A stretch of 64,000 bases of DNA from Pocillopora damicornis (GCF_003704095.1 NW_020847648.1:62001-126000), one strand, 5' to 3'. Positions 38,902 through 62,610 are shown, counted from the first letter of the stretch. Translations and numbers: made by a program. Notes: a model not told the origin generated them from the letters alone.

Positions 38902-39016
38902 AATAAAAGTGATCCTCGCAGTGATGTGCACTACTTAGGCAGTGGTGAAAATAAGGCCTGAAAAAGATTCAGGCCTGTACGGGATTTGAACCCATGACCT
39001 CTGCGATACCGGTGCA
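38902..39016 (-). mobile_element. 5'-truncated tRNA-derived SINE
   Basis: Pol III B-box GGTTCAAATCC (38992-38982 minus) followed by the hairpin caggcctgaa...ttcaggcct. The A-box is missing and there is no complete cloverleaf. Confidence 0.75.
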
Positions 39017-40581
39017 TCAGAAGAGATGGGAACATCTGCTTCAGCTTTTACATTCCAGTTGGGTCTGGGTGTCACTGCGTTGAAACTTTCTCTGAAAAAG
39101 CTGTAATTGGTGAAAGAATAACTCCACACTAGCGTCCAGCCTCCTCCATCAGTTTCCATGTCACAGTAAGCTTTGAAAGCGTTGGCTTGGAGCCCACCAA
39201 CAGGATCAATCCAATAAACATCCGAGGGAGGGTGACTGATGAGGGACTGGCACGAGGGAACCGCTGACGATTGAGTAGTACCTGGAAGCACAGATAAATT
39301 ATTTCTATTGTTAGTGTTATTGTTATGTTTTTTTTGTTTTTGAGGGATAAAGTAGAGAGACCACCAAGTCATTAATTATTAGCTCCTCGAATGGAACGCT
39401 GTTTCCGGGAGGTCCACACCTCGATGCGATTTTTAGTGTAAGCAGTATTTATGTTGCGCTTTATGAGGAATGGAAGCGAGTCAGGATGAAAACGACTTCG
39501 AGAAAAGTTGGAAATAATATTCGTAGAGCGATATTTCTCGAGGGAAGACTGTTCGTGTCTGGGAAAAGAGAACAGTTTTACCCCAAGACTGGAGAAAAAT
39601 TTAGTGGTGTCTTCTTCTGTTGCCTTTGAGTAATTCTTTATTTCATTGTTTCTTTGTTCATTTCACATCGTTCTACCAGACACCCACTCTTTGTTTTTCC
39701 GATGTTTATAGTTGTAAAGTAAGAACCCACACAGGTTGCCAGCGAAATGTCGTCTCACATGCAGCCGTAAGAAATACTGGAGAGTAACTTATGATTGATT
39801 GGTATCTACATCCTATTACCATCCCTTCCTATGGGAGTTTTCGTGCCATCTTTTAAAAAATCGGGTCCGAAGCAGTGAGTCCATTAGCCTTAGTTCTGCA
39901 ACTTTGTTGTTCTTGTAGATTGAGAAATTGTGAAATTTTAGGCTCTCTATTTGAGATGGAGACTGCTCTACTTACCTAGTGAGTTAGAAACTTGAGGCAA
40001 ATTGATCTGTTAGAATTGAATCAATGAACTGTCAAGGAAGCACGAGGTAACAAACAAAATGAATGGAAGAGAACAACACCGACAACAAATAAAGAAAGTT
40101 AACAAAAATCTATGGAAAAAGAGACAACAGCAAAAAACTTTTCACGCCTTCGAAACGAGGTGTCAACTCGCTTTATGGTTCTAGTGGTTACCATGAAAAT
40201 CTTCTTATCTCTAGAGCACTTAGCATTTTGCAGTTTCACAAAATTATTTTAAAAAAGTCAAGGCGTTGTAAAGAAATAAATTTCATGTTATCAAACCTTT
40301 TCAAGGTAGAACACGTCATCTTGCTGGGGTCGTTTCTGGCATTCTTCTCTTTGTGCTGTATCAAGTAGCGAACAAGTTCTTTGATTTACCCAAAACATGG
40401 CAATTTTACAACCTTCGCGCCTCGCACACAAGTGGGAACAAGACATTATAGAGCCTGTCTTTCCGGTCCAAAGGGTGTTTTCCTTCGAGAACGAAGTGCC
40501 ATCTTTGATATGAAAGTGAAACCCAAACAACTCTGCTTGTACCTTTGTAATGATCAAGAGGAACAGAAACATCCCCGCCAT
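38935..40581 (-). pseudogene. PAN/Apple + fibrinogen-related secreted protein, copy A; last exon truncated by a SINE (could still encode a short protein)
   Basis: Exon 40581-40297 (signal peptide, CSHLCARREGC...C), micro-exon 40006-39976 (INLPQVSNSL-G), exon from 39281 (SCQSL..DVYWIDP..AFKAYCDMETDGGGWTLVWSYSFTNY). The frame runs into the SINE at 39016 and stops at 38935. Confidence 0.75.
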
Positions 40582-41698
40582 AACCTGTCAAAGAAAGAAG
40601 TAACGACGAGAGTCGATGCACCCTTGTAATTTGAATTTATGAATTCATAGATAGTTTGTTTTAAATTGCCTTCTTTTTCGCAGATTTTCTTTCCCGTGCA
40701 CGTGTTTTTAAATTAAACATTGGCGCGTCAAGAGTCGAAAAAATGATTAGAAATGTTAAAAAATTTTTAAAACAATTTGTGTGAGTGGTCTTGTAAAGTC
40801 TTGAGTTATAAATGATGTTGAGACAAGCAGAAACATAATTGATGTAGGCTTTAAGAAAAAAAAAAGTGAGAAAGCTAGTTTAGACAGCTTACAATTCTGG
40901 CATTCAAACTAAAAGATGTTCCTTTATCTCGTTCACTTTAAGTATTTTCGAGTGAGACCAAGGTGTTCTCTACGTTTTTGTAGGATTGATATCATTAAAC
41001 GTAGCTACAGGTATCGTAACAGTGAAAGATACTTGTTTCTATTCGCGAGATTTTAAGCTTGCTTTTGCATCGAGCATTAATTTGTGTTCTGACAACTTTC
41101 TCCGCTGCAGGGTACCTTTCAAATAAAGTTTGTTTTTCCACACATCGTCTCAATATTGGAAGAAGCGTTATGTCATAAAAGGCAGTTTCATGGACCATAA
41201 TTTGTGATAAATTGCTTAAATCATACCTCCATTCTGAATCAGGCAGGATCGTAAGCTGTTCTGTAGCTTGCGCACGCATATATCCCTTCTTTTAAATGCT
41301 CCAGCTCAACTCTGATTCAAGTGGAGATCACTACCTTGAAGAACTTTGTATAGCTACTAAATTATTAAGTGAAATCGCGCCTAGCACGGAATCCAAGGGC
41401 AGTTAAACTAATTTAATTATGAAATATTACTTTGATGCCTGGAGAGGTCCAATTCAGGCAAGGCATAACAAACTGAGAAATGTTTTCAAATAACTTTGTA
41501 AACATAAAATCTTTTGTCACTTTTATGACTTATCTTTGATGGTCCCTTAGCGACACTNNNNNNNNNNNNNNNNNNNNNNNNNNNNNNNNNNNNNNNNNNN
41601 NNNNNNNNNNNNNNNNNNNNNNNNNNNNNNNNNNNNNNNNNNNNNNNNNNNNNNNNNTCTCTTAGTTACCAATATCAACACTAATCTTCCGCTCTCAC

Positions 41699-42662
41699 CT
41701 TGGGTTAAAGCGGTTATTCCCAGGAGGTCAACCTGCATTGGAGTCAAATAATACATATCAGTTAATACCCATACCTCGTGCGTGTATGCGTACAAAGTTC
41801 TTGAAGGCTCATTGGGTAGTAATCGTGTGCTCTCAGTTGTTGGTGGCTTCAGCTTATAACTGAACAATTTATGTGCTTAGGATGATAAGCTTTATTATGA
41901 AATGAACTTCTGGTAATTGGTCTTGTCATCTCCATTTTTTAACTAAAGGGGGTAATTTTCGAAAGAAGCGGTGGTGTTAAGTNNNNNNNNNNNNNNNNNN
42001 NNNNNNNNNNNNNNNNNNNNNNNNNNNNNNNNNNNNNNNNNNNNNNNNNNNNNNNNNNNNNNNNNNNNNNNNNNNNNNNNNNNNNNNNNNNNNNNNNNNN
42101 NNNNNNNNNNNNNNNNNNNNNNNNNNNNNNNNNNNNNNNNNNNNNNNNNNNNNNNNNNNNNNNNNNNNNNNNNNNNNNNNNNNNNNNNNNNNNNNNNNNN
42201 NNNNNNNNNNNNNNNNNNNNNNNNNNNNNNNNNNNNNNNNNNNNNNNNNNNNNNNNNNNNNNNNNNNNNNNNNNNNNNNNNNNNNNNNNNNNNNNNNNNN
42301 NNNNNNNNNNNNNNNNNNNNNNNNNNNNNNNNNNNNNNNNNNNNNNNNNNNNNNNNNNNNNNNNNNNNNNNNNNNNNNNNNNNNNNNNNNNNNNNNNNNN
42401 NNNNNNNNNNNNNNNNNNNNNNNNNNNNNNNNNNNNNNNNNNNNNNNNNNNNNNNNNNNNNNNNNNNNNNNNNNNNNNNNNNNNNNNNNNNNNNNNNNNN
42501 NNNNNNNNNNNNNNNNNNNNNNNNNNNNNNNNNNNNNNNNNNNNNNNNNNNNNNNNNNNNNNNNNNNNNNNNNNNNNAGAAAACACCATTTTCGGCTCCT
42601 TCAGCTGTCTTTGCCGCTAAGAACAAGACGATTGCAAATCGGTACTCGATTTGAAGTAACAT
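41699..42662 (-). CDS. PAN/Apple + fibrinogen-related gene, copy B (partial; mostly in gaps)
   Basis: cag|ATG at 42662 (MLLQIEYRFAIVLFLAAKTAEGAENGVF, then N gap); micro-exon 41732-41699 (VDLLGITALTQ-G) with intact AG/GT. Flanks match copy D. The last exon is not seen. Confidence 0.55.
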
Positions 42663-43057: not shown

Positions 43058-46000
43058 NNNNNNNNNNNNNNNNNNNNNNNNNNNNNNNNNNNNNNNNNNN
43101 NNNNNNNNNNNNNNNNNNNNNNNNNNNNNNNNNNNNNNNNNNNNNNNNNNNNNNNNNNNNNNNNNNNNNNNNNNNNNNNNNNNNNNNNNNNNNNNNNNNN
43201 NNNNNNNNNNNNNNNNNNNNNNNNNNNNNNNNNNNNNNNNNNNNNNNNNNNNNNNNNNNNNNNNNNNNNNNNNNNNNNNNNNNNNNNNNNNNNNNNNNNN
43301 NNNNNNNNNNNNNNNNNNNNNNNNNNNNNNNNNNNNNNNNNNNNNNNNNNNNNNNNNNNNNNNNNNNNNNNNNNNNNNNNNNNNNNNNNNNNNNNNNNNN
43401 NNNNNNNNNNNNNNNNNNNNNNNNNNNNNNNNNNNNNNNNNNNNNNNNNNNNNNNNNNNNNNNNNNNNNNNNNNNNNNNNNNNNNNNNNNNNNNNNNNNN
43501 NNNNNNNNNNNNNNNNNNNNNNNNNNNNNNNNNNNNNNNNNNNNNNNNNNNNNNNNNNNNNNNNNNNNNNNNNNNNNNNNNNNNNNNNNNNNNNNNNNNN
43601 NNNNNNNNNNNNNNNNNNNNNNNNNNNNNNNNNNNNNNNNAATGCAACGAATAAATTTAAAGTACAACATTAGATTGAAAGGATCACTTAATGAATAGCT
43701 GATGATATTTCAATATATTTTAACATAGTAAACGAAATTTCTAGCATTAAAAACATTATTTCTGCGAATATATTCGGCTGAATTTGACTTAAAATTNNNN
43801 NNNNNNNNNNNNNNNNNNNNNNNNNNNNNNNNNNNNNNNNNNNNNNNNNNNNNNNNNNNNNNNNNNNNNNNNNNNNNNNNNNNNNNNNNNNNNNNNNNNN
43901 NNNNNNNNNNNNNNNNNNNNNNNNNNNNNNNNNNNNNNNNNNNNNNNNNNNNNNNNNNNNNNNNNNNNNNNNNNNNNNNNNNNNNNNNNNNNNNNNNNNN
44001 NNNNNNNNNNNNNCAGTTTGCATTCAAAAAATCAATTATCAATCAATGCCAGATATCTAACAGGATAACATTTTTACTCTAGATTAAATGGTTTTCTCTT
44101 TTTTAGATGAAATAGCACATTATNNNNNNNNNNNNNNNNNNNNNNNNNNNNNNNNNNNNNNNNNNNNNNNNNNNNNNNNNNNNNNNNNNNNNNNNNNNNN
44201 NNNNNNNNNNNNNNNNNNNNNNNATAATTTTTTCAAGATCGAACAATCATTTTTCACTTGGTTGAGCTCGACTCTCCACTAGCATCACGTGTAAGCCAAT
44301 GATCTCCAGAGCAACTATCCAATTGATAGCAAGACCCGCTTCAGCGCATGCTCCAAGAGAGTAACGGTCCATAGCCTTAGGATTTATTGGATGAAATTTT
44401 AAAGCAGTAAAGAAGAAAAAGTAACTTTGCATAAAATTCCCTTAGCAAATAATGATTCCGTGATCTTCGCTTGACCGTTCTATTTTTCTATTTGGATACA
44501 GCAATACAGCTTTGACATTTTGTTTTCTTAACAACACGTTTCCAATTACTCCACAACTCTATTTTGACATTTTAAATGAAATGCACAAGTCTTGCAGGTT
44601 TATAATGCAATTATCATGACTTTTAGGTATATGGAAATACCGGAAGGCTGAAAAAAAGAAAATTGGTAAGAGACAAAATTAAAACTGATCATGAAAACAC
44701 AGCCTTTTGTATTAAACACCTGGCAAAGAGGAGTTACATTCCTGAATGGAAATAAAAAAGCAAGACTTGCATAATTCAGCGAGAGAATTGGATCATTTAC
44801 AAGTTTGATGATGTTGCAGATTGTTGGCTACAGTTATAAAACGTGCTAAAAAGGGCAGGCTAAATGTACAGATACCAAATAGTGCCGAGAATTTGCTAGA
44901 AAAATGAAAGGATCCCTCCCTGTGATTTTTAATGATTTCTATTTTGCTTTTCGTTCGGCTTTTTTTTCTCGATGTCTTTTGTTTGTTTAATAAAGTCTGA
45001 TAAAGTAGAAACAATAACATCGCAAAAATTTATAAAAAATTAAATATACAGTCCGAAAAACAAGGATTTTGCCCTAGGGAACAGCGGCAAGTATATTGAT
45101 TAAATTGTAACGTTCTATCAGAATATTCGCGGAGGAGAGTCAAGTGGTAATTTTGTGATACGAGAAAAAATCTTAGGTTCGTCAATGAATGATTTGAATA
45201 TGAGGAAGCGAGAATCTATAGTGACCTGCCTTAAAGATCGCGATCAATCCCTATTACGAAAAGGTTTACGCTATTGACAAGACTAGACAACGTTTTATTT
45301 ACATAAAATCAATTTAATCAAATTGTAATAATTATTTTATTTGACAGTATTTTCAAGGGAATGTACTATCTTGTTATTGCTGATTTATTAAAAAATCATC
45401 AGTGGTTGGGCATTCTCTGTGTCTTTACCAGCTGTTTTAGCAAGAAAAACTAATCAAGTAATATGAATTCGTTTCACTTGAATTTTCCTTATGACTGTTT
45501 TGTATGCCCTTCCCTGAGAAAATGTGTTATAGGAAATATACGGATAACGGAAACAGGTGCTCATCACAGAGCAACTAACTTTCATAAACTAATTTAACAA
45601 ATGAAATGCTCCTTGATCATGGACAGGCCAGTTACGCCCTGTGGAACCGTTAAAATAATAGTACGGGTTGACGGTTTAGAAAATCGGTCCACAGCTTACT
45701 ATCCGTTCAAAAAATGAGGATGCCGGTGTATCTTTGCACGTTTCAGTCACGTGATTGATGACCTGACAGTTGATGTTAGCTAATTTTGCAGGTGGTTTAA
45801 CCAATTCTCTTTCTCCGTGGGGTCAAAACTGAATGGCACAGCAAGAAAGAGTCTAAAGGAAGGACTATAAAAAGAATTGGCTGCCAATTAACTCTCAATT
45901 AGGGGGATCATAGGAACATTCCAGAGCCTTATTAGGGATCCAATGAATTTTATCGTGAATCAACCAAACATCTTCTCACCCCCGGCGATAGTAATGGCTG

Positions 46001-47067: not shown

Positions 47068-47919
47068 CTATAAGCCTCGAATAAGAATATTACCATGTGG
47101 AGTTACAACATTTCTCATTTGGTTGGGCGAGTTTGTTCCGATACGATCATGGGTAGGAAAATGGTTCATGGTAGAGCCATCAAAATAGTAGTAAACGGTG
47201 TTCCACGGCCCACTCATGGAGAACAGTGGTCCCACTTGTTTGGAAAAAAAAGGGAAGGAACCAACGTGTTACTCGGATCATCCGGCACCTGTTTAATTAT
47301 CGTACAGTTGACGCCACCTTCCCGCCAATCAACCAAGCTGCCACTTCCCGGATCACACACCAGCCAATTGCTTATGTTGCTTATGATGAGGACCTGTCTG
47401 CAGAGTTGCCTCCAGGGTGAAAAGTTCATGGCCCTGTAGTCTGTTTCATTTAATGGAGGAGTTGCGGAGATAGGAACATCCGCTTGAGATCTCACCAGCC
47501 AATTTGGCCTCGGAGTGATCGCATTTGATTTACGCCTAAAATGACTGTAGTTAGTGAAGGAATAACTCCATACAAAACTGCAACATATCATCAATGGCAA
47601 ATACCTTTGTTAAATATATAGAACCATCTCGCTGGTAAAGATGCCCAGCTGCTGAACTTGTTTGCATTTCGCCGCGAAGAAGGTGACAAAGTCTTTGGTT
47701 TTCTAAAAATTTTGCTCTTCTGCAAGAAGTTTCCCGCCCACACAACGCAGAACAGGAAAGCAAAGAGTCAGTTTTGCCAGACCAAACGAGACTTTCCTCA
47801 CTGAAACCGAAAAAGCTGTTTTCTTTGATTTGGAAGAAAACGCCATGTTCGGATCCTTCTGTTGTCGTCTTTGCCAACAACAAGAGGAAAGCAAATCGGT
47901 ACACGACTTGAAATAACAT
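47068..47919 (-). pseudogene. PAN/Apple + fibrinogen-related gene, copy C (internal deletion plus frameshift)
   Basis: Intact PAN exon 47919-47605, then about 30 nt of intron joined directly to VWSYSFTNY of the last exon. The micro-exon and the YCDMETDGGGW part are absent. A small deletion near 47230 shifts the frame; the homologous stop is at 47068. Confidence 0.8.
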
Positions 47920-48243: not shown

Positions 48244-49907
48244 GAGTGCAAAGGAATGGTTTCACCTATTAGGTCATAAAGTTTTGAAAAAAATGGGTAA
48301 CAAGTGTTTCAATTATTAAAACTGGGTTTCGTAAAGATTTTATTATTGAAGACCAGTTCTCTGTCCCCAGTTCATCATCCAGCTCTTATTCCCTCACCTG
48401 CTCATCGATCTGACAATTCAACGATATTTCAGACAAGTATTACTCATTTTTTAAATTTTTGTTGTTTGCCAACTTTACTGCGACATCATGATCACAGTCT
48501 TTCAAAACCATGCAATGTTCAACTTCCAATTTTTTGTGTCGTGTTTTTCTGCGGTATGAAAGCTAAGAAACTGCCATCAACTTTTCATTAATAACTTGAC
48601 CCCTAAGAATGACCCATGGCATTTTTTTTTTTCATTACAAAATCACCCTTGAACCAGAATCACGATAATAAAGGAAACGATCACCAACTAACGAAGCTCT
48701 TGATTGATAAACAAATTCTCCTAGCCAGTACCTTAAGAAAAGTATAAAGACCAGTTTATGGAGAATATGCATATTGATGTTGGGGTCCAGAGGGTGAAAT
48801 ATGGCAGTTTAAATCAGTCCCCTAGTTATTAATCTCAACACAAGTCTGCCGCTCTCACCTTGGGGTGAACTGGGTATTCCTAGGAGGTAAACCTGCATTG
48901 GAGTCAAACAATACATATCAGTTAATATCCATACCTCATATGCATGCGTACGAAATTCTTGAAGGCTTATTGCTTAATAAATGTACGTGCTCGTAGTTGT
49001 CTGTGGCTACCGCTTAAAACTGGACGTTTTATGTGCTTTGGATGATAAGCTTGATTTTGAAATTAACTTGTGGTAATTGGTTATGTCGTTCCTATGTTTT
49101 AGCTAAAGGGGGTAATTTTCGAAAGAAGCTCTGGTGTTAAATCGGTGCGGTCAATGCAAACTGGCTAACATTGAGTTCCTAAAGCTGAAGGAGGGCCATA
49201 GCTTGAAAGGCTAGCTCTCAAAACTCTTGAAGGTGGCCAATTAACATTACCAACTCAGTTGATAACGCCAAAATATCTATTTTTTAAAGCGTATCACCAC
49301 TGATTATGTTGCTCTTTATAAATATTCATGCATCTAAGACTTTTTCTTTTTTATTAATTCAGCGCACTATGAATTAAACGCTCTGGTCTTTTTCGTAGTT
49401 TTCTTAAACTGAAATTAAATTTGATAGAGTTTTTGTCTCTTGAAATTATGGTAACAGTGATCACTTTTGCTGTGAAAAGTCTTCACTCTGATGGGAAACA
49501 TCGAGCAACGGTTTTCTGGGTCGTGATAATGCTAAAATGATCGCAAGTTGTCATCCGAAAACTATAACATGTAAAACAAAAAAGATGTGAAATACCTTTT
49601 TTAAATAGAATGAGCCATCTCGCTCTAAAAGCCACCCAGCTGCTGAACTTGTTTGCATTTCGTCGCGAAGAAGATAACAATGTCCTGCTTTTTGCAGAAA
49701 GTTTGCACCTCTGCAAGAAGCTTGCCTCGCACACAAAACAGAACAGGAAAGCAAAGAATCAGCCCCAGACCAAAAAGGGCTTTCTTCTCCAAAGCTGAAA
49801 AATTTGTTTTCTTTGATTTGAAAGAAAACACCATTTCCAGCTCCTTCGGTTGTCTTTGCCGCTAAGAACAAGACGAATGCAAATCGGTACTCGACGTGAA
49901 GTAACAT
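48244..49907 (-). CDS. PAN/Apple + fibrinogen-related gene, copy D (possibly intact; last exon runs into a gap)
   Basis: cag|ATG exon 49907-49596 (MLLHVEYRFAFVLFLAA...CSVLCARQASC...HCYLL...FYLKK|gt), micro-exon 48892-48859 (VYLLGIPSSPQ-G), last exon starts at 48265 (G-ETIPLH) and enters the N gap. Confidence 0.7.
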
Positions 49908-50158
49908 CTGTGAGAGAATCTTGAGACAAAATGTATAGTTAGTAAACGTGTAAAACATATGAATTACCTGCCTATAGACAAAATAGTCAAACAAGACAGA
50001 ACGATCAAAAAGCAACAGAAATTTTAACCCACCCTATTCTGTTGATGGAAAAACACCGNNNNNNNNNNNNNNNNNNNNNNNNNNNNNNNNNNNNNNNNNN
50101 NNNNNNNNNNNNNNNNNNNNNNNNNNNNNNNNNNNNNNNNNNNNNNNNNNNNNNNNNN

Positions 50159-52235
50159 CGCTTGTCTCGTCGATGAAAATGCTCTTCAAAGTGAAAACGC
50201 TGACTCTTTATTAGCTTGTGCTCAAATGTGTTGGAGAGAGGCTTCTTGTAAAGGAGCAAATTTCCTGGCGAACAAAGGCACCTGTTCGCTTTTTGGCGAA
50301 GGACAACAAGCAAAAAAGTTGGAGAGATTTGTAAAACGGGATGATTCTTTCTATGTGAAAAAGGTATTTCGTAAATTTTGTATACTTTGCCGTTGCCATT
50401 TATTTTTTTATTCAGTGCGATCTCAACTGAATGAAACTTTCTTTGAGAGCCAGATATTTTAGGCAATGCTGTGCGGTTGTTGTTGTTGTTTTTTTTTATT
50501 TTATTGTTTTCTTTTACATGTTTATGTTTCAATTTGGTTTTCATAATCCTTTTCGTAAAGCTTGACTGGAAATCTATGTTCTAGTGTCGGAAATGCCATA
50601 TAGCCGGAAGACCGGATCAATAAAAGATACATGTCGGCATGTTCTATCGTATCCATTTTGTAAATGTTTGTTATTCATTCTCATTAATTTACTTTGAAGT
50701 ATTGGAAAAGAAAATTGCACCTGTCGCTTTCATCTGTATGTACCCTCTCAGGTAGCCTGAATCAAAGACTACTTTAAATGAACCGTGATAAAATTCCACA
50801 GCAAGCTAACAGTTTAAAAAATTATTAGAGAAAAAACCTAGAGCAAAAAAAGATGACCAAAATTGAACTTCGTTGCGGTTCACAGGTTGTCTCTCCTGGA
50901 ATATCTGGTCCACGAGGTATGTGATCATTTTCTATATTCACCATGTCTTCCTTGTACCCAAAAGGGCTCCGTGATTAAGACCTATTCTATGAATAGAAGT
51001 AAAGCTGTTCGAAAGAACTAATTGTACCACACACCTTTTAATGCACCGCAACGAAAAAGGGGTTGACGCATAAGGTCACTGTAGCAACGTTCCACCCTGT
51101 AATTGAGCTCTGTACTTTTGTAACGCAGGGCAAATTAGTCGACCCCATTCCATCAGGGCAAAGCACCAGAGTGCCTATGCCTAGAATTGCACGGTTCAAC
51201 CTAACATTTAGCAGTAACCGCGAGCCAGACTCTCCTCAACTAATGTCCCACTTCGACTTCGGGTGTTTATTGGATTGGTCCTCATCGTGAATCCCCTGTC
51301 AACTTATTCAAAGCTCTCTGTGACATGGAGACTGATGGGGAAGGTTAACTTAAACGGTTCGAAGTTTTTCCTTTCCTATATATATCACCAAAAGAGGTGA
51401 TACTAGTCAAATTTTTATACCTATTCGTACATGATTGTATTGTCGATGAATAGCCCGACTGTTGCCAGTATGAAAATAAATCCTACTTCTGATACCAAAC
51501 ATGTTGTTATCGTCTTTCCGAAACATCTGTTACCCTGTAGGTCAAAGCATTCCCTTGCACTCTGGTTCAACCCAGCATTCAGCAGGACACTCGTGTCAGA
51601 CTATCCTCAGTAAATATCCTACTTTGATCTCTGGCGTTTATTGGATTGATCCTGATGGTGGATCCCAGGCCAACGCTTTCAAGGCTTACTGTGACATGGA
51701 GACTGATGGAGGAGGCTGGACACTAGTGTGGAGCTATTCCTTCACTAATTATAGTCATTTTACGAGCAAATCAAATGCAATCACTCCGAGGCCAAATTGG
51801 CCGGTGAGACCCGAAGTGGATGTTCCTATCTCCACAACTCCTCCATCAAATGAAATAGACTACAACGCCATAAACTTCTCACTTTGGAAACAACTCGGCA
51901 GACAGGTTCTCATCAAGAGCAACGTAAACAACTGGCTGGTGTGTCATCCGGGAAATGGCAGCTTGGTCGATTGGCAGGAAGGTGACGTGAACTGTAAGAT
52001 AATTAAACTCGTGATTGACCCAAGCATATCATTTTCTTCTGCGCCTTCTGAGTTTTCGCCGAACCGAGCCTATGGACCGCTGTTCTACCTGAGTACACCC
52101 TGGGGGAGCATTTCCTATTACTTTGATGGTTTTACAGGAAATCATTGGCCTACCCATGATCCTAGTGGAAGCAATAGGCCTAACCAAAAGAAGAATGTTG
52201 TTAATCCACATGGAAACATTTTTGTTCGACCTTGA
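50159..52235 (+). CDS. PAN/Apple + fibrinogen-related gene, copy E (apparently intact; 5' end in gap)
   Basis: PAN exon <50159-50363 (DSLLACAQMCWREASC...TCSLF...FYVKK|gt), micro-exon 50886-50916 (VVSPGISGPR-G), last exon 51541-52235 open to TGA. Phases 0/1 are consistent. Confidence 0.8.
51191..51346 (+). pseudogene. Relic of the fibrinogen-like exon 5' end within an intron of copy E
   Basis: Reads GST*HLAVTASQTLLN*CPTSTSGVYWIGPHRESPVNLFKALCDMETDGEG, homologous to 51560-51720. Confidence 0.7.
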
Positions 52236-54290
52236 AAATATTAAAGATGCATTAGTAAATGAAATAAATGGCATAAATAAAAAATTCAATATCACTTTGA
52301 AGTTCAAGCCGGCTGATGACTCGCAATTCAAATTTAGTGTTTTGTAAACATTTTTTCTTTAAAACGTTCAATACACATTACTTTTAAAAATATTCAGACT
52401 GAAATATTGACTTCGGCATCTACGTTATTACTTTGTTTCATCTCAAATGCGTTTGCGAGGCCGGTTGGTAACAATAATTTTGCTCTAGGACACGCATTTT
52501 TAAACATTTACATTTTCATTTGTACTCAAAACATTTAAGTTTCCTTGCTAGGTGTTTCAAACAACTTTACTGCAGTTAGATGTTCAGTTTTAATTCGTCT
52601 TCCTCTAATTTTTTCGTCATTCATTTTTCCGTTGAAGCCTTTTGGATGTTCTTCCCAAATGCTGTTTATTTATAGAAGTCATGATAACTGCATTATCAAC
52701 CTGCTGGGCTTTTGTTTTTCAGTTTAAAGTCAAAAAAGAGTTGTGGAGTAATTGGAAACGTATTGTAAAGAAAACAAAATTTCAAAGCTGTATTTCTCTN
52801 NNNNNNNNNNNNNNNNNNNNNNNNNNNNNNNNNNNNNNNNNNNNNNNNNNNNNNNNNNNNNNNNNNNNNNNNNNNNNNNNNNNNNNNNNNNNNNNNNNNT
52901 TTCTTTACAATACGTTTCCAATTACTCCACAACCTTTTTTTGACTTTAAACTGAAAAACAAAAGCCCAGCAGGTTGATAATGCAATTATCATGACTTCTA
53001 TAAATAAACACCATTTGGGAAGAACTTCCAAAAGGCTTCAACGGAAAAATGAATGACGAAAAAAATTAGTGGAAGACGAATTAAAACTGAACATCTAACA
53101 GCAGTAAAGTTGTTTGAAACACCTAGCAAGGAAACTTAAATGTTTTGACTACAAATGAAAATGTAAATGTTTAAAAATGTGTGTCCTAGAGCAAAATTAT
53201 TGTTACCAACCGGCCTCACAAACGCATTTGAGATGAAACAAAATAATAACGTGGATGCCGAAGTAGATATTTCAGTCTGAATATTTTTAAAAGTAATATG
53301 TATTGAATGTTTTAAAGAAAAAATGTTTACAAAACACTAAATTTGAATTGCGAGTCATCAGCCGGCTTGAACTTCAAAGTGATATTTAACTTTTTATTTA
53401 TGCCATTTATTTCATATACTAATGCATCGTTAATATTTTCAAGGTCGGTTTTAATTCGTCTTCCACTAATTTTTTTCGTTATTCATTTTTCCGTTGAAGC
53501 CTTTTGGATATTCTTCCCAAATGCTGTTTATTTATAGAAGTCGTGATAATTGCATTATCGAACAATGTTTCCATGCGGATGAACAACATTCTTCTTTTGA
53601 TAAGGCCTATCGCTTCCACTAGGATCATGGGTAGGCCAATGATTTCCTGTAAAACCATCAAAGTAATAGGAAGTGCTCCCCCAGGGTGTACTCATATAGA
53701 ACAGCGGTCCATAGGCTCGGTTCGGCGAAAACTTAGAAGGCGCAAAAGAAAATGATATGCTTGAGTCAATCACGAGTTTAATTATCTTACAGTTCACGTC
53801 ACCTTCCTGCCAATCAACCAAGCTGCTATTTCCCGGATGACACACCAGCCAGTTGTTTACGTTCTTGATGAGAACCTGTCTGCCGAGTTGTTTCCAGAGT
53901 GATAAGTTTATGGCGTTGTAGTCTGTTTCATTTGATGGAGGAGTTGTGGAGATAGGAACATCCACTTCGGGTCTCACCGGCCAATTTGGCCTCGGAGTGA
54001 TTGCATTTGATTTGCTCGTAAAATGACTATAATAAGTGAAGGAATAGCTCCACACTAGTGTCCAGCCTCCTCCATCAGTTTCCATGTCACAGTAAGCCTT
54101 GAAAGCGTTGGCCTGGGATCCACCATCAGGATCAATCCAATAAACACCAGAGATCAAAGTAGGATATTTACTGAGGAGAGTCTGACACGAGTGTCCTGCT
54201 AAATGCTGGGTTGAACCAGAGTGCAAGGGAATGCTTTGACCTACAGGGTAACAGATGTTTCGGAAAGACGATAACAACATGTTTGGTGAT
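51484..54290. repeat. Long inverted repeat (arms about 1.3 kb) centred on a 100-N gap
   Basis: 51484-52799 is the reverse complement of 52900-54290, with scattered substitutions and small indels. Confidence 0.9.
53555..54240 (-). pseudogene. Copy F: isolated last exon, an inverted duplicate of copy E
   Basis: Open frame with intact acceptor, but homology to E ends about 50 bp upstream and no micro-exon or PAN exon is seen. It has 14 substitutions and 2 single-codon deletions versus E, and an insertion replaces the natural stop. Confidence 0.65.
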
Positions 54291-54954: not shown

Positions 54955-55762
54955 NNNNNNNNNNNNNNNNNNNNNNNNNNNNNNNNNNNNNNNNNNNNNN
55001 NNNNNNNNNNNNNNNNNNNNNNNNNNNNNNNNNNNNNNNNNNNNNNNNNNNNNNNNNNNNNNNNNNNNNNNNNNNNNNNNNNNNNNNNNNNNNNNNNNNN
55101 NNNNTGAAATATATCAATTAAGGTTTATAAATGCAGAATGAGTAATAGCAAACACTATGGTCTTAACATGAAGTAAAAGTTGTTTTTATTAGCATTTCGA
55201 AGGTAGTTAGCATAAAAAGGAAAACTCAGTTTCCACGCAGTTCACTATTTTCAAACTCCGTTATATGTTTTTACTATTGATTAATGCTCATTACTCAACC
55301 CCTTTACTCCTGGCCTTTCCATGGAAATATGAAAAGAAAAAAAACCCCGTGGCGACAATTATTTAGTGGGGTAATTGATCCAGGCTTCCCTGAGTGAATC
55401 TTATTTACTCATTTTATTCTAAGAATTGCTCTAGCTGATTGCAGCTATCTGGTTTAGTGGTTGGCACGAGTTTTGTAAACATCAGCGGCAAAAGTAGTCA
55501 CGATTAAAAACACTGAGAGCTTAAATTTTGTTGTACAACAATAAAGAAGAAACTAGCACCTAATCAAGTCAAAGTTTCGCGAAGTGATTTTAATTCTCTA
55601 AAGTTCCATTGGAAAGTAAAATTCTGAAAGATAATCCCCCGATCTCTCATGATGAGTGTAACNNNNNNNNNNNNNNNNNNNNNNNNNNNNNNNNNNNNNN
55701 NNNNNNNNNNNNNNNNNNNNNNNNNNNNNNNNNNNNNNNNNNNNNNNNNNNNNNNNNNNNNN

Positions 55763-55901
55763 CTCGAATAGCTTTTATTACTATTTTGACGGTTACACAG
55801 GGAACCATTGGCCTACCCATGATCCTCTCGGAACAAATGGGCCCAACCAAAAGAAAAATGTATTTGATCCACATGGTAACATTTTTATTCGAGCCGAGTA
55901 G
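55763..55901 (+). CDS. 3' end of another fibrinogen-related last exon (rest in gap)
   Basis: SFYYYFDGYTGNHWPTHDPLGTNGPNQKKNVFDPHGNIFIRAE* immediately after an N gap. Confidence 0.6.
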
Positions 55902-55959: not shown

Positions 55960-56250
55960 TTAAAATCATTACATTACTGGTGTGTCATCCGAGAAATGAC
56001 AGCTTGGTTGATTACAGGGAAGGTGACATCAGTTGTGAGATATCCAACATATAACTGACGCGTGCAAAGATACACAAGTGCATTTTTTTTTAACGGATAG
56101 TAGGCTATGGACCAATTTTCAAAACCGTCATCCTGTACTGTCATTTTGATGGTTCCTCAGGGTGTAACTGGACTGTCCATGATCCATGTGGACGAAACAG
56201 ACCCGATCACTTGAATGGTTTCGCTAAGCCTTCTCAGAACATTTCATTTG
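55960..56250 (+). pseudogene. Highly decayed fragment of the same exon family
   Basis: LVCHPRNDSLVDYREGDISCEI...YGPIF...HFDGSSGCNWTVHDPCGRNRPDHLNG, with frameshifts. Confidence 0.65.
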
Positions 56251-57400: not shown

Positions 57401-57432
57401 TTTTAAACTTTACAATTCAAATTTTTGGTTTC

Positions 57433-58270
57433 TTCACTGTTACATGAAAAAACTTTTATAACATAGCGCGCGTGCTTGCCCTACATAAGTCCTATTGAGC
57501 CGCTATGAACAAAATCTTTATTTACGCACGCCCGTGCGTAAATAAGATGACGTAGAATATTTTATTCGTGGCTGCAGAGTTTCCGTCCTGTTAAGCTGCA
57601 GTGCAGTTTTCCCTCTCTTTGAAATATGGAAGAAACCAGCGAAGAACTGCCCAATTTTTCTATCGAAGTTGACCTTTTAGGTCCTGATCCAACAAGCAAC
57701 AAAAATAAAGCCGAAATAAAATCGCAAGTTGCATGTTTCGCAAATTTGTCCGAAGACCAACTGCAGCAAATTTTGGCCGAAAGACATTCACTGGTAACAA
57801 AAAAAGTCACCAACTGGTCATTAACAATATTTAAAGTTAAAATTTCCGTTTTTACTTTATTATCCGTTTTTAAATTTACTCAAACTTGGGGAATAATGTA
57901 CACAGTTGTTAATTGGGAATTTACCAAAACCAAAACAATCAAGGCCGCAAAAAATCTAAATCTAAAACCATTTTCCCAGTAAATTTTGAGCCCTTTATTT
58001 ACAGTTATCGGTTAACTGGATCAAATGTTATCGCTCAAACCAGAGTTTAAAATGTGGCGTATTTTTCACCAGCCAATAGGGACGTTTGTTTACTTTTTTT
58101 TTGTGCGTTGTGAGAATTTTGCATTCTATCTCAATAAAGGGCTTCTTCGCGCAGATCCTTGTTGTCGCTCTTTTGTAAAAGAATTTGCTCCTGCTTTTAG
58201 CTGTGCGTATATCGAGTTATGGATGCACTTGGGAAGTTTGGAGAGCACTAAAAAACGTAGAGGTGCTCTC
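57433..58270 (+). mobile_element. Probable Crypton-like (tyrosine recombinase) DNA transposon remnant
   Basis: ORF 57626-57982 contains FANLSEDQLQQILAERHSLVTKKVTNWSLTIFK, resembling the N-terminal helix motif of Crypton/DUF3504-associated proteins. It sits where the PAN exon of copy G would be expected. Confidence 0.4.
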
Positions 58271-58345: not shown

Positions 58346-59673
58346 GTTTATCTCCCAGGAATAACCACTTCGATCCAAGATGAGAGCGGAAGATTGGTGT
58401 TGAGATTGGTAACTAGGAAACTGATTTAAACTGCCATATTTAACCCTCCATAGCCTATCGTTAGTATGCATATTCTCCATACCAGTCTCTATACATTTAC
58501 TAGGGTACTAACAAAGAGAATGTGTTTATCTATCAAGAGCTTTGTTAGTTGATGATTATTTCCTTTATTCCCGTCATTCTGATTCAGGGTTGATTTTGCG
58601 ATGAAAAATAGATACCAGTCACTCTTAGGGGTCAAATGATTAATGAAATGTTGAAAGCAGCTATTCAACTTTCATACCGCAGACAAACACGACGCAAAAA
58701 ACGGGAGTTAGGCATTGCATGGTTTTGAAATATCAAAATTGTGACATCGTAATATAAAGTTGGCAAACATCAAAAATGTTAAAACTGAGTAAAACTTGTC
58801 TAAAATATCGTCGAATTGTCAGGTCGATGAGCAACTTAGGGAATAAGGAGTAGATGATGAGTTGGAAACAGAGAACTGGTCTTCAATACAGAAATCCAGT
58901 TTTAATCATTTAAAAACGTGTTCTCCATTTTTTCAAAACCTTGTAACCCAATAGGTCAAACTATTCCTTCGCACTCTGGTTCAACCCAACATTCAGTGGG
59001 ACACTCGTGCCCGACCCTCCTCAGGAAGAATCCTACTTCAAACTCTGGTGTTTATTGAATTGCTCCTATCGGTGGATCTCAGACCAACGCTTTCGAGGCT
59101 TACTGTGATATGAAGACCGATGGAGGAGGCTGGACACTAGTATGGAGCTATTCCTTCACTAATTACGGTCATTTTAACCATAAATAGAATGCGATCACTC
59201 TGAGGCCAAATTGGCCGAGGAGTCCTAGAATGGCTGGTCTTGTCTCCACAACTCTTCCTTTGAATGAAACAGACTACAACGCCATGAACTTCTCACTCTG
59301 GAAACAACTCGGCAGACAAGTCCTCATCAAGAGCAACATAAACAACTAGCTGGTGTGTCATCCGGGAGATGGCAGCTTGGTTGATTGGCAGGAAGGGGAC
59401 GTCAACTGTACGATGATTAAACAAGTGCCGGATTATCCGAATAAGATGCTGGTGAATAACACGTTGGTTCCATCCCTTTTTCTTCCAAACAAGTCGCCCC
59501 AAAGCTATGGACCACTCTTCTCCTTGAGTGGGCCATGGAATACCGTTTACTACTATTTTGATGGCTCTACCATGCACCATTGGCCTACCAATGATCCTTC
59601 CAGAACAAATTCCCCCAACCAAATGAAAAATGTTGTAAATCCACATGGTAATATTTTTACTCGAGGCTTATAG
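58346..59673 (+). pseudogene. PAN/Apple + fibrinogen-related gene, copy G
   Basis: Micro-exon 58346-58379 (VYLPGITTSIQ-G) with donor GT mutated to AT; last exon 58955-59673 with in-frame stops at 59056, 59185 and 59347; no PAN exon seen. Confidence 0.85.
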
Positions 59674-60984
59674 CCAAGGCAGACTGTAACAAATTAATTC
59701 TCACACACAGAATGTCCAAGGGCCGATTACTTTCTTTATAAATATGAATACATTACCCAAGTGATAAGAATCGATGAAATGATCAGCTATCTTATTTAAT
59801 GTTGCACCAAATCCTGATATGCTTATAGCTGCGAAAAGGAAGAATCTTGCACCTAATCAGGAAGCTGACGTTTTAAAAATGTTTTAGGGTTAGACGAGCA
59901 CAAGGGAAGTGTTGGCTACGTTCATCACGTAAAATCAACTGATTATCTAACTGGATTCTATTTTTAGAAAAGTAACCCAGGATTGCTTTGTTTGTTTACT
60001 GACGATTCCCCACAGCTGAGACTTGAGGAAAAACTGTAAAGGGCTCGAATAACCTTAAACACGATTTTAGTTCTTCTGAACTCGGTATATTGTTTGTTAA
60101 TGCTAGTCCTTGTTCGCACCCTTTATCTCTTAGCCATCTTGTGGCGGAGCTCGCAGCGCGCAGCGAAGCCCCATACTTATCAAAAATGGCTACTAAACTA
60201 ATATCAAACTCGATTTAAAGGAGTGTGTCTCCTTAGTGTAAGAACAAGTCTAAAGTTAAAACTACATTGCTTCCAGATTAAATGATACGAAGGAATTTAA
60301 ACAGAAGTGGAAATTCCTTCTCTTTAGTATTTTAAATGCGATATAGTTATTAAGGTAAACTAACCTATACATTGCTATTATCTATTGTAAGACTGTATGA
60401 CAGTCTTGTTAGCTGCATAAGGGTAGCAAAAAATGTCTGTGGCGTATGTAATGTTAAAATAGAAAGCTGATGTTGATGCAAACGGTGACATCGAGAGTCG
60501 AGCCCAACCAAGTGAAAAATGATTGTTCGAACTTTAAAACACTACTAAACATATATTACTTTACGTGAAAAAAGTAAAAAAAAAAACCTATAATATCAGT
60601 TTGAAAGGGCTGGTTCACAAATAACATATTAAATTGTCCCTTCAAATACAAACCTTTCTTTTTCATTTGCACTCAAAAAAGTACTTTTTCTTTACCAGGT
60701 GTTTCAAACAAATATGATGTGTTTTCATACTCAGTTTTAATTTTATCTCCCACCAGTTTTTTATCTTTACCTTTGCATTTCCAGTTTTTGTTTTCTTCAC
60801 CAAACTATTGCATAAAAGAGCTTATTGCAGCCTTTCCGGTATTTCCGTATTCTGTTTACCTAGACGTCGTGATAATTGCATTATAAACCTGCAGAACTTG
60901 AGAACAGAGACTATTTTGATGTAGGTAGGTAATTTATATGTTCCATCATTTGCTAATCATAAGTTTGTGTTAAGATTCTCTCTC

Positions 60985-62610
60985 TTGGCAAGTCGAGTAT
61001 CTATTTGCATTCGCCTTGTTCTTGGCGGCAAAGACAACTGAAGGATCCGATATTGGCGTTTTCTTTCAAATCAAAGAAAACACTTTTTTCAGCTACAGCG
61101 AAAAAAGCCTCTTTTGGTCTGGAAAAACTGATTATTTGCTTTCCTGTTCGGCTTTGTGTGCGAGACAGGCTTCGTGCAGAAGTGCAAACTTTCTGGAAAA
61201 CCCATAACTTTTCACCTTCTTCGCGGCGAAATGCAAACAAGTTCAGCAACTGGGTGGCTTTTACAGCGAGATGGCTCTTTCTATCTAACAAAGGTATTTG
61301 GCATTGATGACATGCCATGTTATTTGGTGACACCTTCCGATAATGTACACCTCACCACGAACAAGTATAAGGCCCTTCCTGCACTAGCAGACAAAACTAG
61401 AATTGTCCCGTTAAAATAAAAGGACAATTTTTGTTTCATCTGTTGCATCCGTTTTAAAAATTTTAAGGCCGTCAAATGCCGTCAGCGTCCGATCTATTCA
61501 TAGGACCAGCCAAAGGATTTTACCTCCAGTCTGCACTTGTAAAATGTTTATGATGATAGAAAATTTGTCAAATTAAACAACTTTTTCGTCGGTGCGGAAT
61601 GGCCCTAATTCTCTTTCCTAGCTACAGTGTGAGGGAGATTTTTTGAAAGCGATAAAGATAACTGCTACGACCATTTCATTAAATAACAACTCCACATACT
61701 TTTTGATTCAGCTCACCAAATCTACGTAATAGATTCGATCCGTCGTTTACACTAATTTGCGTTCTAATATTGGTTCCTTGTTTGATGCTCATTACTAAAT
61801 TTAGGTCGCCAGCTCTAACTTCCGTTACAGGTCTAAAGCACACATAGAGGATACTTTGCTAGACTCACTTTCAATGATGAAATTGTTTTTCTAATTTTAA
61901 ACTATATGACGGTAAAGTAAAACACCTCTCCACCCCCTGGTTCTGACCAGCACTTACCTAACAGTAACCTCACGCCATACTCTCCTCAAACAATTTCCAA
62001 GGACGTCCTCGAGTGTTTATTGGATTGATCCTGATGGTGGATCCCAGGTCAACGCTTTTAAGGCTTACTGTGATATGGATACTAATGGCGGGGGCTGGAC
62101 ACTAGTATGGAGCTATTCCTTTACTAACTACAGTCATTTTAGAGATGATTCAAATGTGATCAGTCTAATACCAAATTGGCCGGCTACGAATAAGGTGTTT
62201 TCGTATCTCCACAACTCCTCCGTTAAATGAAACAGACAAATCTTCAGACTCTGGAAACAACTCGGCAGACAGATCCTCATCAAGAGCAGCATAAACAACT
62301 GGCTGGTGTGTCATCCGGTAACTGGCAGCTTGGTTGATTTGCAGAAAGGTAACGTCAACTGTAGGATCACCAAATACGTGCATTACGTGGCAGACCCTAG
62401 TAAATCATCTTCGGCGCCTTCCAAGTTTTACCAAGCACCAACTATGGACCAATGTTCTATTCGAGTGGGCGCTGGAACGGCACCTTTTATTATTTCAATA
62501 GTTACACAGGCAAAAATTGGCTTACCCTTGATCCTTGTGGAAGAAATAGGCTCAACCAAAAGAAAAACGTTCTTGATACAAACGGTAACATTTTTATACG
62601 AGCCGAGTAG
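60985..62610 (+). pseudogene. PAN/Apple + fibrinogen-related gene, copy H
   Basis: PAN exon to 61293 lacks the cag|ATG start and has TAA at 61205 plus a frameshift. The last exon (about 61938-62610; VYWIDPDGGSQVNAFKAYCDMDTNGGGWTLVWSYSFTNY...GNIFIRAE*) has frameshifts. Confidence 0.85.

What the first reader, a model, noticed from the sequence alone, without database searches (positions are those of the whole stretch)
38935..62610. Birth-and-death array of secreted PAN/Apple - micro-exon linker - atypical fibrinogen-related proteins (candidate diversified recognition system)
Seen: at least 8 copies (A-H) plus 3 fragments of one 3-exon gene: signal peptide + PAN/Apple-type Cys pattern (C-x3-C-x5-C...C), a 31-34 nt linker exon, and an exon starting with the fibrinogen/intelectin N-terminal subdomain (SC..I...SGVYWIDP...YCDMETDGGGWTLV). 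After WTLV the sequence does not follow canonical FReDs (no QRRxDGS, FGxxxGEFWLG or FSTxDxDND). It continues instead as a distinct domain of about 170 aa (WSYSFTNY..NAITPRPNW..NNWLVC.PG.GSLVDW..YYFDG..WPTHDP..NPHGNIF). Known: intelectins use the same FReD-N plus private lectin domain layout, PAN domains bind carbohydrate or protein, and mollusc FREPs are diversified immune lectins. Inference: an invertebrate (probably coral) family of secreted pattern-recognition, symbiont-recognition or matrix lectins under rapid turnover. I do not know of a description of this architecture, but I could not search.
Basis: partly seen in the sequence, partly recalled or inferred. Interest (0 to 1): 0.82.

Follow-up and report, generated by a model that had tools for sequence, protein, structure and literature searches.

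The report
Coral PAN plus divergent fibrinogen-like gene array
A stony-coral scaffold carries a decaying tandem array of genes for secreted proteins that join a PAN/Apple domain to an unnamed, very divergent fibrinogen/intelectin-like domain; the family is real, conserved across anthozoans and also found in bacteria, but nobody has studied it and most copies in this window are broken.

Summary
Window 38.9-62.6 kb contains eight copies and about five fragments of a three-exon gene: signal peptide plus PAN/Apple, a 31-nt linker exon, and a domain exon of about 230 aa. The array runs on past the window.

Only two domain exons are open here (D and E). They form a 95-98% palindrome around an assembly gap. 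The other copies are truncated, frameshifted, stop-bearing or cut by gaps.

A 1.57-kb transcript contig from a related coral breaks exactly at the predicted exon ends, so the family is spliced as predicted. Transcription of this locus itself was not shown.

The 170 aa after GGGWTLV match no Pfam model or PDB sequence. Folded with its N-terminal subdomain, the exon matches only intelectin and fibrinogen-related domains (Z 8-9.5). Folded alone, it has no significant match.

The domain is not private to corals:
- PAN plus this domain occurs in sea anemones and an octocoral.
- The domain alone occurs in an annelid, Telonema and Myxococcota.

dN/dS among intact copies is 0.2-0.4, which indicates purifying selection and gives no sign of diversifying selection. 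I found no paper on the family.

Most likely it is a secreted lectin-like binder, but that is inference. The scan noted a related PAN-head cluster elsewhere in this genome (s1-769267).

The parts
40297..40581 (-). Copy 1, exon 1: start codon, signal peptide, PAN/Apple domain
   Evidence: Open from the ATG at 40581. PAN_1 E 1.6e-6. GT donor follows 40297.
39976..40006 (-). Copy 1, 31-nt linker exon
   Evidence: AG before, GT after, in frame with exons 1 and 3.
38992..39281 (-). Copy 1, domain exon, 3'-truncated (pseudogene)
   Evidence: Matches residues 124-224 of P0014. No further family sequence lies below 38977.
38901..39012 (.). Dispersed repeat that ends copy 1's domain exon
   Evidence: About 112 nt. 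1575 first-look candidates, 61 matches listed, most at 91-97% identity (two at 88%) on many contigs, often as inverted pairs. No tRNA gene called.
42579..42662 (-). Copy 2, 5' stump of exon 1, cut by assembly gap 41983-42577
   Evidence: 79% identical to residues 1-28 of P0014. The rest is unknown and was not read across the N run.
44245..44373 (-). Weak fragment of the domain's C-terminal part
   Evidence: tblastn E 1e-4.
45616..45780 (-). Fragment of the domain's C-terminal part
   Evidence: tblastn E 1.4e-5.
47605..47919 (-). Copy 3, exon 1 (signal peptide and PAN)
   Evidence: PAN_1 E 5.4e-7. 64% identical to P0014 residues 1-106.
47074..47579 (-). Copy 3, domain-exon remnant (pseudogene)
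   Evidence: Begins at residue 177 of P0014, only 27 nt after exon 1 and out of frame. A further frameshift lies near 47240.
49596..49907 (-). Copy 4, exon 1 (signal peptide and PAN), open; no downstream exons found
   Evidence: 79% identical to P0014 residues 1-106. PAN_1 E 2.5e-5. Gap 48144-48243 lies downstream. This short contig sits between two gaps, so its orientation is not secure.
50160..50363 (+). Copy D, 3' part of exon 1 (PAN); the 5' part is lost in gap 50059-50158
   Evidence: Open frame with the PAN Cys pattern. GT donor follows 50363.
50886..50916 (+). Copy D, 31-nt linker exon
   Evidence: AG before, GT after, in frame.
51193..51345 (+). Degenerate fragment of the N-terminal subdomain inside copy D's second intron
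   Evidence: 54-62% identity to residues 12-72. Three TAA codons in the frame.
51541..52235 (+). Copy D, domain exon, open to the TGA stop
   Evidence: AG acceptor at 51539-51540. Contains the FReD/COLFI/GGGWT N-terminal subdomain plus the 170-aa divergent part. 96-98% identical ORFs are on record in ENA metagenome assemblies.
53555..54238 (-). Copy E, domain exon, open; no PAN or linker exon found upstream
   Evidence: 93% aa identity to D. It is the inverted arm of a palindrome: 51494-52773 against 52900-54287, 95-98% complementary, centred on gap 52800-52899. dS against D is 0.049.
55773..55898 (+). 3' end of another domain exon, directly after gap 55663-55762
   Evidence: 83% identical to P0014 residues 306-347.
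55965..56243 (+). Degenerate fragment of the C-terminal part
   Evidence: 39% identity, two TAA codons.
58957..59667 (+). Copy 7, domain exon with three in-frame stops (pseudogene); no PAN exon found
   Evidence: 71% identical to P0014. 1 TGA and 2 TAG.
60989..61299 (+). Copy 8, PAN exon with a stop and a frameshift; start codon lost
61970..62607 (+). Copy 8, domain exon with a stop and a frameshift (pseudogene)

Best explanation
This is part of a tandem and inverted gene array, at least 50 kb long, in a pocilloporid stony coral. It encodes small secreted proteins of about 330-350 aa. Each has a signal peptide, one PAN/Apple module, a short variable linker encoded by a micro-exon, and one globular domain of about 225 aa on a single exon.

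That domain is a very divergent member of the fibrinogen-related/X-type-lectin fold. Its first ~50 residues are the ordinary disulphide-clamped 'C...YCDM..GGGWT' subdomain. The remaining ~170 residues (motifs WSYxFTxY, NAxTPRPxW, NNWxxC, WPxHDP, NPHGNIxIR) form a sequence family with no Pfam model.

Shown:
- The architecture and the splicing pattern of the family.
- Purifying selection on intact copies.
- Conservation of PAN plus this domain across Anthozoa.
- Presence of the domain in Myxococcota, Telonema and an annelid.
- Heavy pseudogenisation in this window.

Inferred: the protein is an extracellular binding protein. The fibrinogen-like domain would recognise a glycan or other small surface ligand through its variable loop region (residues ~156-192 of the exon), as ficolins and intelectins do. 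The PAN module would add a second carbohydrate or protein contact. Gene duplication and decay would vary the repertoire.
For: - Architecture and copies.
- Splicing: transcript contig L020 (1569 nt, uninterrupted 352-aa ORF) aligns to the genomic copies with breaks at the predicted exon ends. cDNA 2-422 matches exon 1, a 45-nt linker follows, and the domain-exon alignments begin at cDNA 468-491 in the window's copies.
- Full-length RefSeq models with the same layout exist in Pocillopora, Stylophora, Montipora, Acropora, Oculina and Desmophyllum.
- Secretion: the models have an N-terminal hydrophobic leader, no C-terminal anchor, and conserved NxS/T sequons (read).
- Fold: the whole-exon AF2 model (pLDDT 83, pTM 0.86) matches only intelectin-1 (Z 9.5, 181 residues), FGL1 and fibrinogen (8.8), ficolin-3 (8.2) and ANGPTL3 (8.1), then COLFI (5.2). 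Everything else is at or below 4.1.
- The NCBIfam 'fibrinogen-like YCDxxxxGGGW' model hits at 3e-21.
- Selection: dN/dS is 0.11-0.39 between the older pairs of intact copies (0.55 for the young D/E pair, only 21 differences), higher in the loop segment (0.33-0.57 where dS could be estimated).
- That loop segment is the least conserved part of the alignment.
- Distribution and architectures.
Against: - No binding, expression pattern or localisation is known for any member. Four literature searches found no paper on the family.
- The C-terminal 170 aa folded alone (pLDDT 95.8) has no significant Foldseek match (best E 0.25). It scores only Z 4-5 to both TLDc domains and FReDs, so continuity with the FReD ligand site is not established.
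- None of the calcium or ligand residues of ficolins or intelectins could be aligned.
- No dN/dS above 1 beyond a six-substitution comparison.
- At this locus no spliced RNA was seen. Contigs from RNA libraries cover introns too, at depth 2-5.
- Only copy D could be a working gene here, and its first exon is cut by a gap.
Confidence: 0.6

Rival explanations
1. Structural or adhesive extracellular-matrix component, for example of mesoglea, skeletal organic matrix or egg coat, rather than a recognition lectin. The domain would mediate oligomerisation or matrix assembly, as the collagen C-propeptide does.
For: - The best Pfam hit of the N-terminal subdomain is COLFI (E 2e-11).
- Some RefSeq names read 'collagen alpha-2(I) chain-like'.
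- Another FReD-N-bearing coral family, USOMP-5/egg protein, is found in skeleton and eggs (PMC4890752, PMC6824150).
- PAN modules are common in matrix proteins.
- Purifying selection, with no sign of an arms race.
Against: - No collagen repeats or other matrix modules.
- The COLFI match is limited to 47 residues, and structural similarity to COLFI is weaker (Z 5.2) than to lectin FReDs.
- The USOMP-5/egg-protein sequences printed in S17 Fig of PMC4890752 share none of the C-terminal motifs of this family.
- High copy turnover is unusual for core matrix components.
Confidence: 0.2
2. Secretory product of cnidocytes or gland cells (venom, mucus or digestive secretion).
For: In Nematostella, members of a greatly expanded FREP family are expressed in mature cnidocytes and were suggested as venom components (PMC12549020). 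The proteins here are small, secreted and tandemly duplicated.
Against: It is not known whether the FREPs of that paper include this family. No toxin-like features and no expression data.
Confidence: 0.08
3. Within this window nothing functional remains. The array is a graveyard of pseudogenes. The two open exons D and E are one locus written twice (haplotypes or a scaffolding artefact around the gap), and the working genes lie elsewhere.
For: - Six of eight copies are visibly broken or incomplete.
- D and E are mirror images centred exactly on a 100-N gap.
- No PAN or linker exon is found for E.
- D's exon 1 is cut by a gap.
- No spliced RNA at the locus.
- Intact copies exist outside the window, for example at contig positions 129112-129801 and 30600-31277.
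Against: - D and E differ by dS 0.049 and by indels, which is high for alleles.
- Separate DNA contigs match each arm without differences, and one contig runs from 52799 into 165 nt that are not part of the palindrome.
- D's ORF is on record at 96-98% identity in ENA metagenome assemblies (clusters of 171, 29 and 7 member sequences), and DNA runs of four studies hold 79-86% of its words.
- Both ORFs are fully open over about 690 nt.
- A poly(A) library holds a contig across D's stop codon (52076-52417).
Confidence: 0.25

Closest known systems
Intelectins / X-type lectins (human intelectin-1, Xenopus XEEL, lamprey LSVL)
   Same: - Secreted.
- The fibrinogen-type N-terminal subdomain (C...CDM..GGGWTLV) is followed by a part that no longer matches canonical FReDs.
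- Best structural match of the whole exon (Z 9.5, 181 residues).
- Top, though non-significant, Foldseek hit of the C-terminal part.
- RefSeq names an octocoral relative 'intelectin-like'.
   Different: - No sequence similarity beyond residue ~83.
- The calcium and ligand residues of intelectins could not be aligned.
- The domain is shorter (about 225 aa against about 280 aa).
- It carries a PAN module.
- Its family extends to bacteria.
Canonical fibrinogen-related lectins (ficolins, tachylectin-5, mollusc FREPs, angiopoietin-like proteins)
   Same: - Same superfamily fold at Z 8-9.
- First disulphide and the GGGWT strand are conserved.
- Extracellular.
- Often tandemly expanded in invertebrates.
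   Different: - Pfam Fibrinogen_C matches only profile positions 4-46 of 221.
- None of the B/P-subdomain motifs are present.
- No collagen, coiled-coil or IgSF partner.
- No evidence of somatic diversification.
Bacterial 'fibrinogen-like YCDxxxxGGGW domain' proteins (NCBIfam NF040941, GGGWT_bact)
   Same: The N-terminal subdomain scores higher on this model (75 bits) than on either animal Pfam model. Myxococcota proteins, including one from a Haliangium MAG, match the whole C-terminal profile at E down to about 1e-53.
   Different: The bacterial proteins are either short or giant multidomain surface proteins carrying Laminin_G_3, Big_2 and CBM_4_9. The NCBIfam model covers only 46 residues and says nothing about the rest.
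USOMP-5 / coral egg protein (EP) family
   Same: A coral secreted family in which only the fibrinogen subdomain 1 is recognisable (PMC6824150). An earlier scan note links a PAN-EGF form to it.
   Different: After GGWT the sequences printed in PMC4890752 S17 Fig follow a different pattern and lack every C-terminal motif of this family. The 120 listed hits carry no USOMP-5 name.
PAN/Apple-module proteins (plasminogen/HGF N domain, factor XI apple domains, apicomplexan MIC adhesins)
   Same: PAN_1 hits above the cut-off, and a four-Cys core (C-x3-C-x5/6-C...C).
   Different: There is a single module used as the N-terminal head of a small lectin-like protein.

Membership tests
Fibrinogen-related domain (Pfam PF00147) | N-terminal A subdomain with a conserved disulphide and the YCDM..GGGWT strand | tested here: met
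   PF00147 E 2.2e-6, 28 bits against a cut-off of 22, profile positions 4-46. C18 and C50 are invariant.
Fibrinogen-related domain (Pfam PF00147) | Sequence match over the B and P subdomains (profile positions ~50-221), including the calcium and ligand site | tested here: not met
   No Pfam or PDB sequence match beyond residue ~83. The profile of the C-terminal 169 positions finds nothing in the PDB.
Fibrinogen-related domain (Pfam PF00147) | Overall FReD fold | tested here: inconclusive
   The whole exon scores Z 8-9.5 over 170-181 residues, to FReDs and intelectin only. The C-terminal part alone scores Z 3.8-4.6, tied with TLDc domains, and Foldseek is non-significant.
Intelectin / X-type lectin | Homology of the C-terminal lectin part, with the calcium-coordinating ligand site | tested here: not met
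   phmmer aligns only residues 24-83 to intelectins. The profile search is blank.
Intelectin / X-type lectin | Calcium-dependent binding of exocyclic diol glycans | not testable with these tools
   Needs recombinant protein.
Fibrillar collagen C-propeptide (COLFI, PF01410) | Full 233-position domain following a collagen triple helix | tested here: not met
   Only profile positions 24-70 match. There are no Gly-X-Y repeats in the full-length homologues. Z 5.2.
PAN/Apple (PF00024) | Profile match above the gathering score and the conserved Cys core | tested here: met
   24.5-29.8 bits against a cut-off of 21.4 in three window copies. 23-39 bits in the anemone and octocoral homologues.
NCBIfam NF040941 GGGWT_bact | 46-residue YCDxxxxGGGW domain above the cut-off | tested here: met
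   75.1 bits against a cut-off of 30.
Mollusc-type FREPs (diversified immune lectins) | IgSF domain(s) upstream of a canonical FReD; somatic or strong positive diversification | tested here: not met
   No IgSF domain. dN/dS is below 1. Somatic variation was not testable.
USOMP-5 / coral egg protein | Shared conserved region downstream of GGWT | tested here: not met
   Read from S17 Fig of PMC4890752: the motifs differ. This was a comparison by eye, not an alignment score.

The most novel reading that the evidence does not exclude
The ~170-aa part after GGGWT defines a third, unnamed branch of the fibrinogen/X-type-lectin superfamily. It is shared by Myxococcota, possibly cyanophages, the protist Telonema and a patchy set of animals, perhaps spread by horizontal transfer. 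Anthozoans fused it to a PAN head and expanded it into a repertoire of soluble receptors for microbial or symbiont surface glycans.
Probability: 0.25. Interest if true: 0.7.

Novelty: new variant of a known kind. Interest (0 to 1): 0.5.

Why it matters
Corals lack adaptive immunity and must tell symbionts, commensals and pathogens apart with germline-encoded binders. An expanded, conserved and completely unstudied family of secreted PAN plus fibrinogen-like proteins is a concrete candidate set for that task, or for matrix assembly.

For protein-family curators, the C-terminal 170 aa is a large family with no Pfam model: more than 500 clusters at 50% identity. It folds with high confidence and occurs in both bacteria and eukaryotes.

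The value lies in the family, not in this window. The window's copies are mostly dead and sit in a gap-ridden short-read assembly.

Tried and rejected
- **USOMP-5 / coral egg protein.** The sequences printed in PMC4890752 S17 Fig share only the GGWT subdomain, and the 120 listed hits carry no USOMP-5 name. Rejected for this family.
- **CTHRC1.** It turned up in the COLFI-plus-coral literature search and is a different, C1q-like domain.
- **Protein atlas.** Blank for the window's C-terminal part. With P0014 it returned only unnamed cnidarian clusters and some clusters whose few labelled members are phages. This is a lead only.
- **Phage collection.** Cyanomyophage hypothetical proteins match the N-terminal subdomain, and one matches up to residue ~113. 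None covers the whole domain.
- **Read laying.** Only contigs were available. No joint at either predicted intron. Random-primed RNA libraries cover introns at depth 2-5, which could be DNA or pre-mRNA. One odd joint (52586 to 53448, one contig at depth 3) lies in the inverted repeats and was not interpreted. No support for transcription of this locus, and no evidence against it.
- **Tree of 41 domains.** The backbone is unresolved, so it says nothing on horizontal transfer. One row I added (coral_winD) was cut out of frame and must be ignored. The scleractinian core clade (100/99) and the grouping of one coral paralogue with anemone sequences (94/94) do not depend on it.
- **The search for related loci with alignment A3** failed for lack of conserved stretches. 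With P0138 it returned mostly N-terminal-only matches.
- **ARAGORN** found no tRNA gene at the element that truncates copy 1. The element is a dispersed repeat, and its class is left open.
- **Spliced model.** All searches used single exons by reference.
- **Gaps and human sequence.** No gap was filled or read across. Nothing here looked human.

Full report
**What and where.** The window is G000:C4283:62001-126000 of a 234,350,878-base assembly in 4,393 contigs. The nearest named homologues are from Pocillopora, Stylophora, Oculina and other stony corals. That identification is from memory and was not tested.

**Observation.** ORF listing and tblastn show eight copies and about five fragments of one gene between 38.9 and 62.6 kb, on both strands.
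- Pfam calls PAN_1 in the first exons (E 5e-7 to 2.5e-5, above the cut-off).
- In the large exon, Pfam calls only COLFI (E 2e-11) and Fibrinogen_C (E 2e-6), and only over about 46 residues.
- phmmer against PDB sequences agrees. Collagen C-propeptides, fibrinogen, intelectins and ficolins align to residues ~20-83 and no further.
- The linker micro-exon is 31 nt with AG/GT borders and keeps the frame in copy 1 and copy D.
- Exon 3 of copy D starts at 51541 after an AG and runs open to the TGA at 52233-52235.

**State of the copies.**
- Copy 1 is cut at 39012 by a ~112-nt dispersed repeat with over 1,500 candidate matches in the genome.
- Copy 2 is a 5' stump that abuts gap 41983-42577.
- Copy 3 has lost the linker and the first ~60 residues of the domain exon, is out of frame, and has a second frameshift.
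- Copy 4 is an open PAN exon on a short contig between two gaps.
- Copy D lacks the 5' part of exon 1, which is lost in gap 50059-50158.
- Copy E is an open domain exon with no upstream exons found.
- Copy 7 has three in-frame stops.
- Copy 8 has stops and frameshifts in both exons.
- Nothing in this report reads across an N run, and no gap was filled.

D and E are arms of a palindrome (51494-52773 against 52900-54287, 95-98% complementary) centred on the 100-N gap at 52800-52899. Their dS is 0.049. DNA contigs of run X1 match each arm separately, and one continues from 52799 into 165 nt foreign to the palindrome. I lean towards a real inverted duplication but cannot exclude a scaffolding artefact.

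The array continues beyond the window to contig position ~152 kb. A second subcluster lies at 0.8-38 kb, and further copies are on at least eight other contigs. About ten domain exons are open genome-wide.

**Is the gene model real?** I did not build or search a joined model. Each exon was searched by reference.
- Full-length RefSeq and Logan/JGI proteins of 324-353 aa have exactly the predicted layout.
- One of them, P0022, is encoded without interruption on a 1,569-nt Logan contig (L020).
- That contig aligns to the genomic copies in pieces that end at the predicted exon borders. cDNA 2-422 matches exon 1, a 45-nt linker follows, and the domain-exon alignments begin at cDNA 468-491 in the window's copies.

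- There was no joint at either intron.
- Low-depth contigs from random-primed RNA libraries also cover introns.
- One poly(A)-library contig spans the stop codon (52076-52417).
- Transcription of this locus is therefore not shown.

**What is the C-terminal 170 aa?**
- By sequence it is an orphan. A profile of 13 paralogues finds nothing in the PDB, and no Pfam model covers it.
- The whole exon, modelled with 40 homologues (pLDDT 83, pTM 0.86), was aligned against about 48,000 PDB representatives. It matches intelectin-1 (Z 9.5, 181 residues), FGL1 and lamprey fibrinogen (8.8), ficolin-3 (8.2), ANGPTL3 (8.1) and the collagen C-propeptide (5.2). The next family scores 4.1. Foldseek agrees (E ~2e-6, TM 0.4-0.5).
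- The C-terminal part alone, modelled with a deeper and more diverse alignment, is very confident (pLDDT 95.8, pTM 0.91). It matches nothing significantly with Foldseek (best E 0.25, a Xenopus intelectin). It reaches only Z 4-5, tied between TLDc domains and FReDs or intelectin.
- My reading: one domain of the fibrinogen/X-type-lectin superfamily whose B/P part has diverged about as far as that of intelectins, independently of them.
- Two Cys pairs are conserved (C18-C50 and C134-C151 in exon numbering). A third pair (TDTC...HDPCG) is present in most members, and both of its partners are lost in the pocilloporid clade that includes D and E.

**Distribution.** The C-terminal profile alone was searched against 1.84 billion representatives. 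It finds at least 500 clusters at E up to 0.001, and 152 at E up to 1e-30.
- Labelled members include Nematostella, Actinia, Exaiptasia and the octocoral Dendronephthya. All carry PAN upstream, and Exaiptasia has an extra EGF.
- Other labelled members are the annelid Owenia, the protist Telonema (also with a PAN-like domain), Myxococcota MAGs and a Haliangium MAG.
- The bacterial proteins are either short or giant surface proteins with Laminin_G_3, Big_2 and CBM_4_9.
- The N-terminal subdomain fits NCBIfam's bacterial 'YCDxxxxGGGW' model better (75 bits) than either animal Pfam model.
- A quick tree left the backbone unresolved (one of my rows was mis-framed), so the direction or existence of horizontal transfer is open.

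**Selection and function.** Pairwise Nei-Gojobori estimates between intact copies give dN/dS of 0.11-0.39 overall for the older pairs. In the poorly conserved segment (residues ~156-192) the values are 0.33-0.57 where dS could be estimated. The only value above 1 (D against E, 1.65) rests on six substitutions. The genes are therefore under purifying selection with relaxed loops, and diversifying selection is not shown.

The leader peptide, the conserved sequons, the lack of an anchor, the lectin-type fold relatives and the carbohydrate-binding companions in bacteria make a secreted ligand-binding (probably glycan-binding) role the best guess. It remains inference. Matrix, egg and cnidocyte roles are live rivals.

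**Known or new?** Four literature searches found no paper on the family. Databases call its members 'uncharacterized', 'collagen alpha-2(I) chain-like', 'intelectin-like' or 'Veficolin-1'. USOMP-5 and the coral egg protein, suggested by an earlier scan note, form a different FReD-N family.

I class this as a new variant of a known kind: an unnamed, widely distributed branch of the fibrinogen-related superfamily, here in a decaying coral array. The scan has already noted a related PAN-head cluster on another piece of this genome (s1-769267).

Noticed in passing
window 9837-11294 (+): Single-exon 485-aa ORF with two TMEM175 repeats (endosomal/lysosomal potassium channel, E 9e-43).
   Followed up: partly
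window 18162-18899, 25649-26377, 29307-30068 (all -): Three tandem paralogues of a multi-pass membrane protein of the 'rolling stone' (Rost, PF21534) family. Only the first was scanned (E 4.6e-16).
   Followed up: partly
window 38901-39012: A ~112-nt dispersed repeat with over 1,500 first-look candidates in the genome. The listed matches are mostly 91-97% identical (two at 88%) and often occur as inverted pairs about 100-250 nt apart, which looks MITE-like. It contains a tRNA B-box-like GGTTCAAATCC, but ARAGORN calls no tRNA.
   Followed up: partly
window 14182-15531 (+) and 57626-57982 (+): A 449-aa and a 118-aa ORF without any Pfam match; not pursued.
   Followed up: no
phage records KX349303.1 31341-31640, NC_015281.1 31612-31776, NC_031900.1 104342-104500: Marine Synechococcus myophages (S-RIM14, S-ShM2, S-SSM2, S-CAM4) encode hypothetical proteins with the GGGWT subdomain. 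In S-RIM14 the match reaches residue ~113 of the coral domain (34% identity, E 2e-6).
   Followed up: partly
L010 (G000:C3923), L011 (G000:C3179), L012 (G000:C3834): Some paralogues split the domain exon. The N-terminal GGGWT subdomain lies on a separate exon 450-600 nt upstream (C3923:571925-572119, C3179:5190-5408), so exon structure varies within the family.
   Followed up: no
P0302, P0319, P0358, P0372 (relatives from other corals): Some family members carry a uromodulin-type D8C domain (PF23283, weak here, E 0.006) in place of PAN. This is a further sign that different heads are joined to this domain.
   Followed up: partly
window 49596-50363: Copy 4's PAN exon (-) and copy D's PAN exon (+) face each other across gap 50059-50158. 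The P. verrucosa protein P0014 is closest to copy 4 in its PAN (79%) and to copy D in its domain exon (76%). Either contig 48244-50058 is inverted in the scaffold or the exons have been reshuffled.
   Followed up: no
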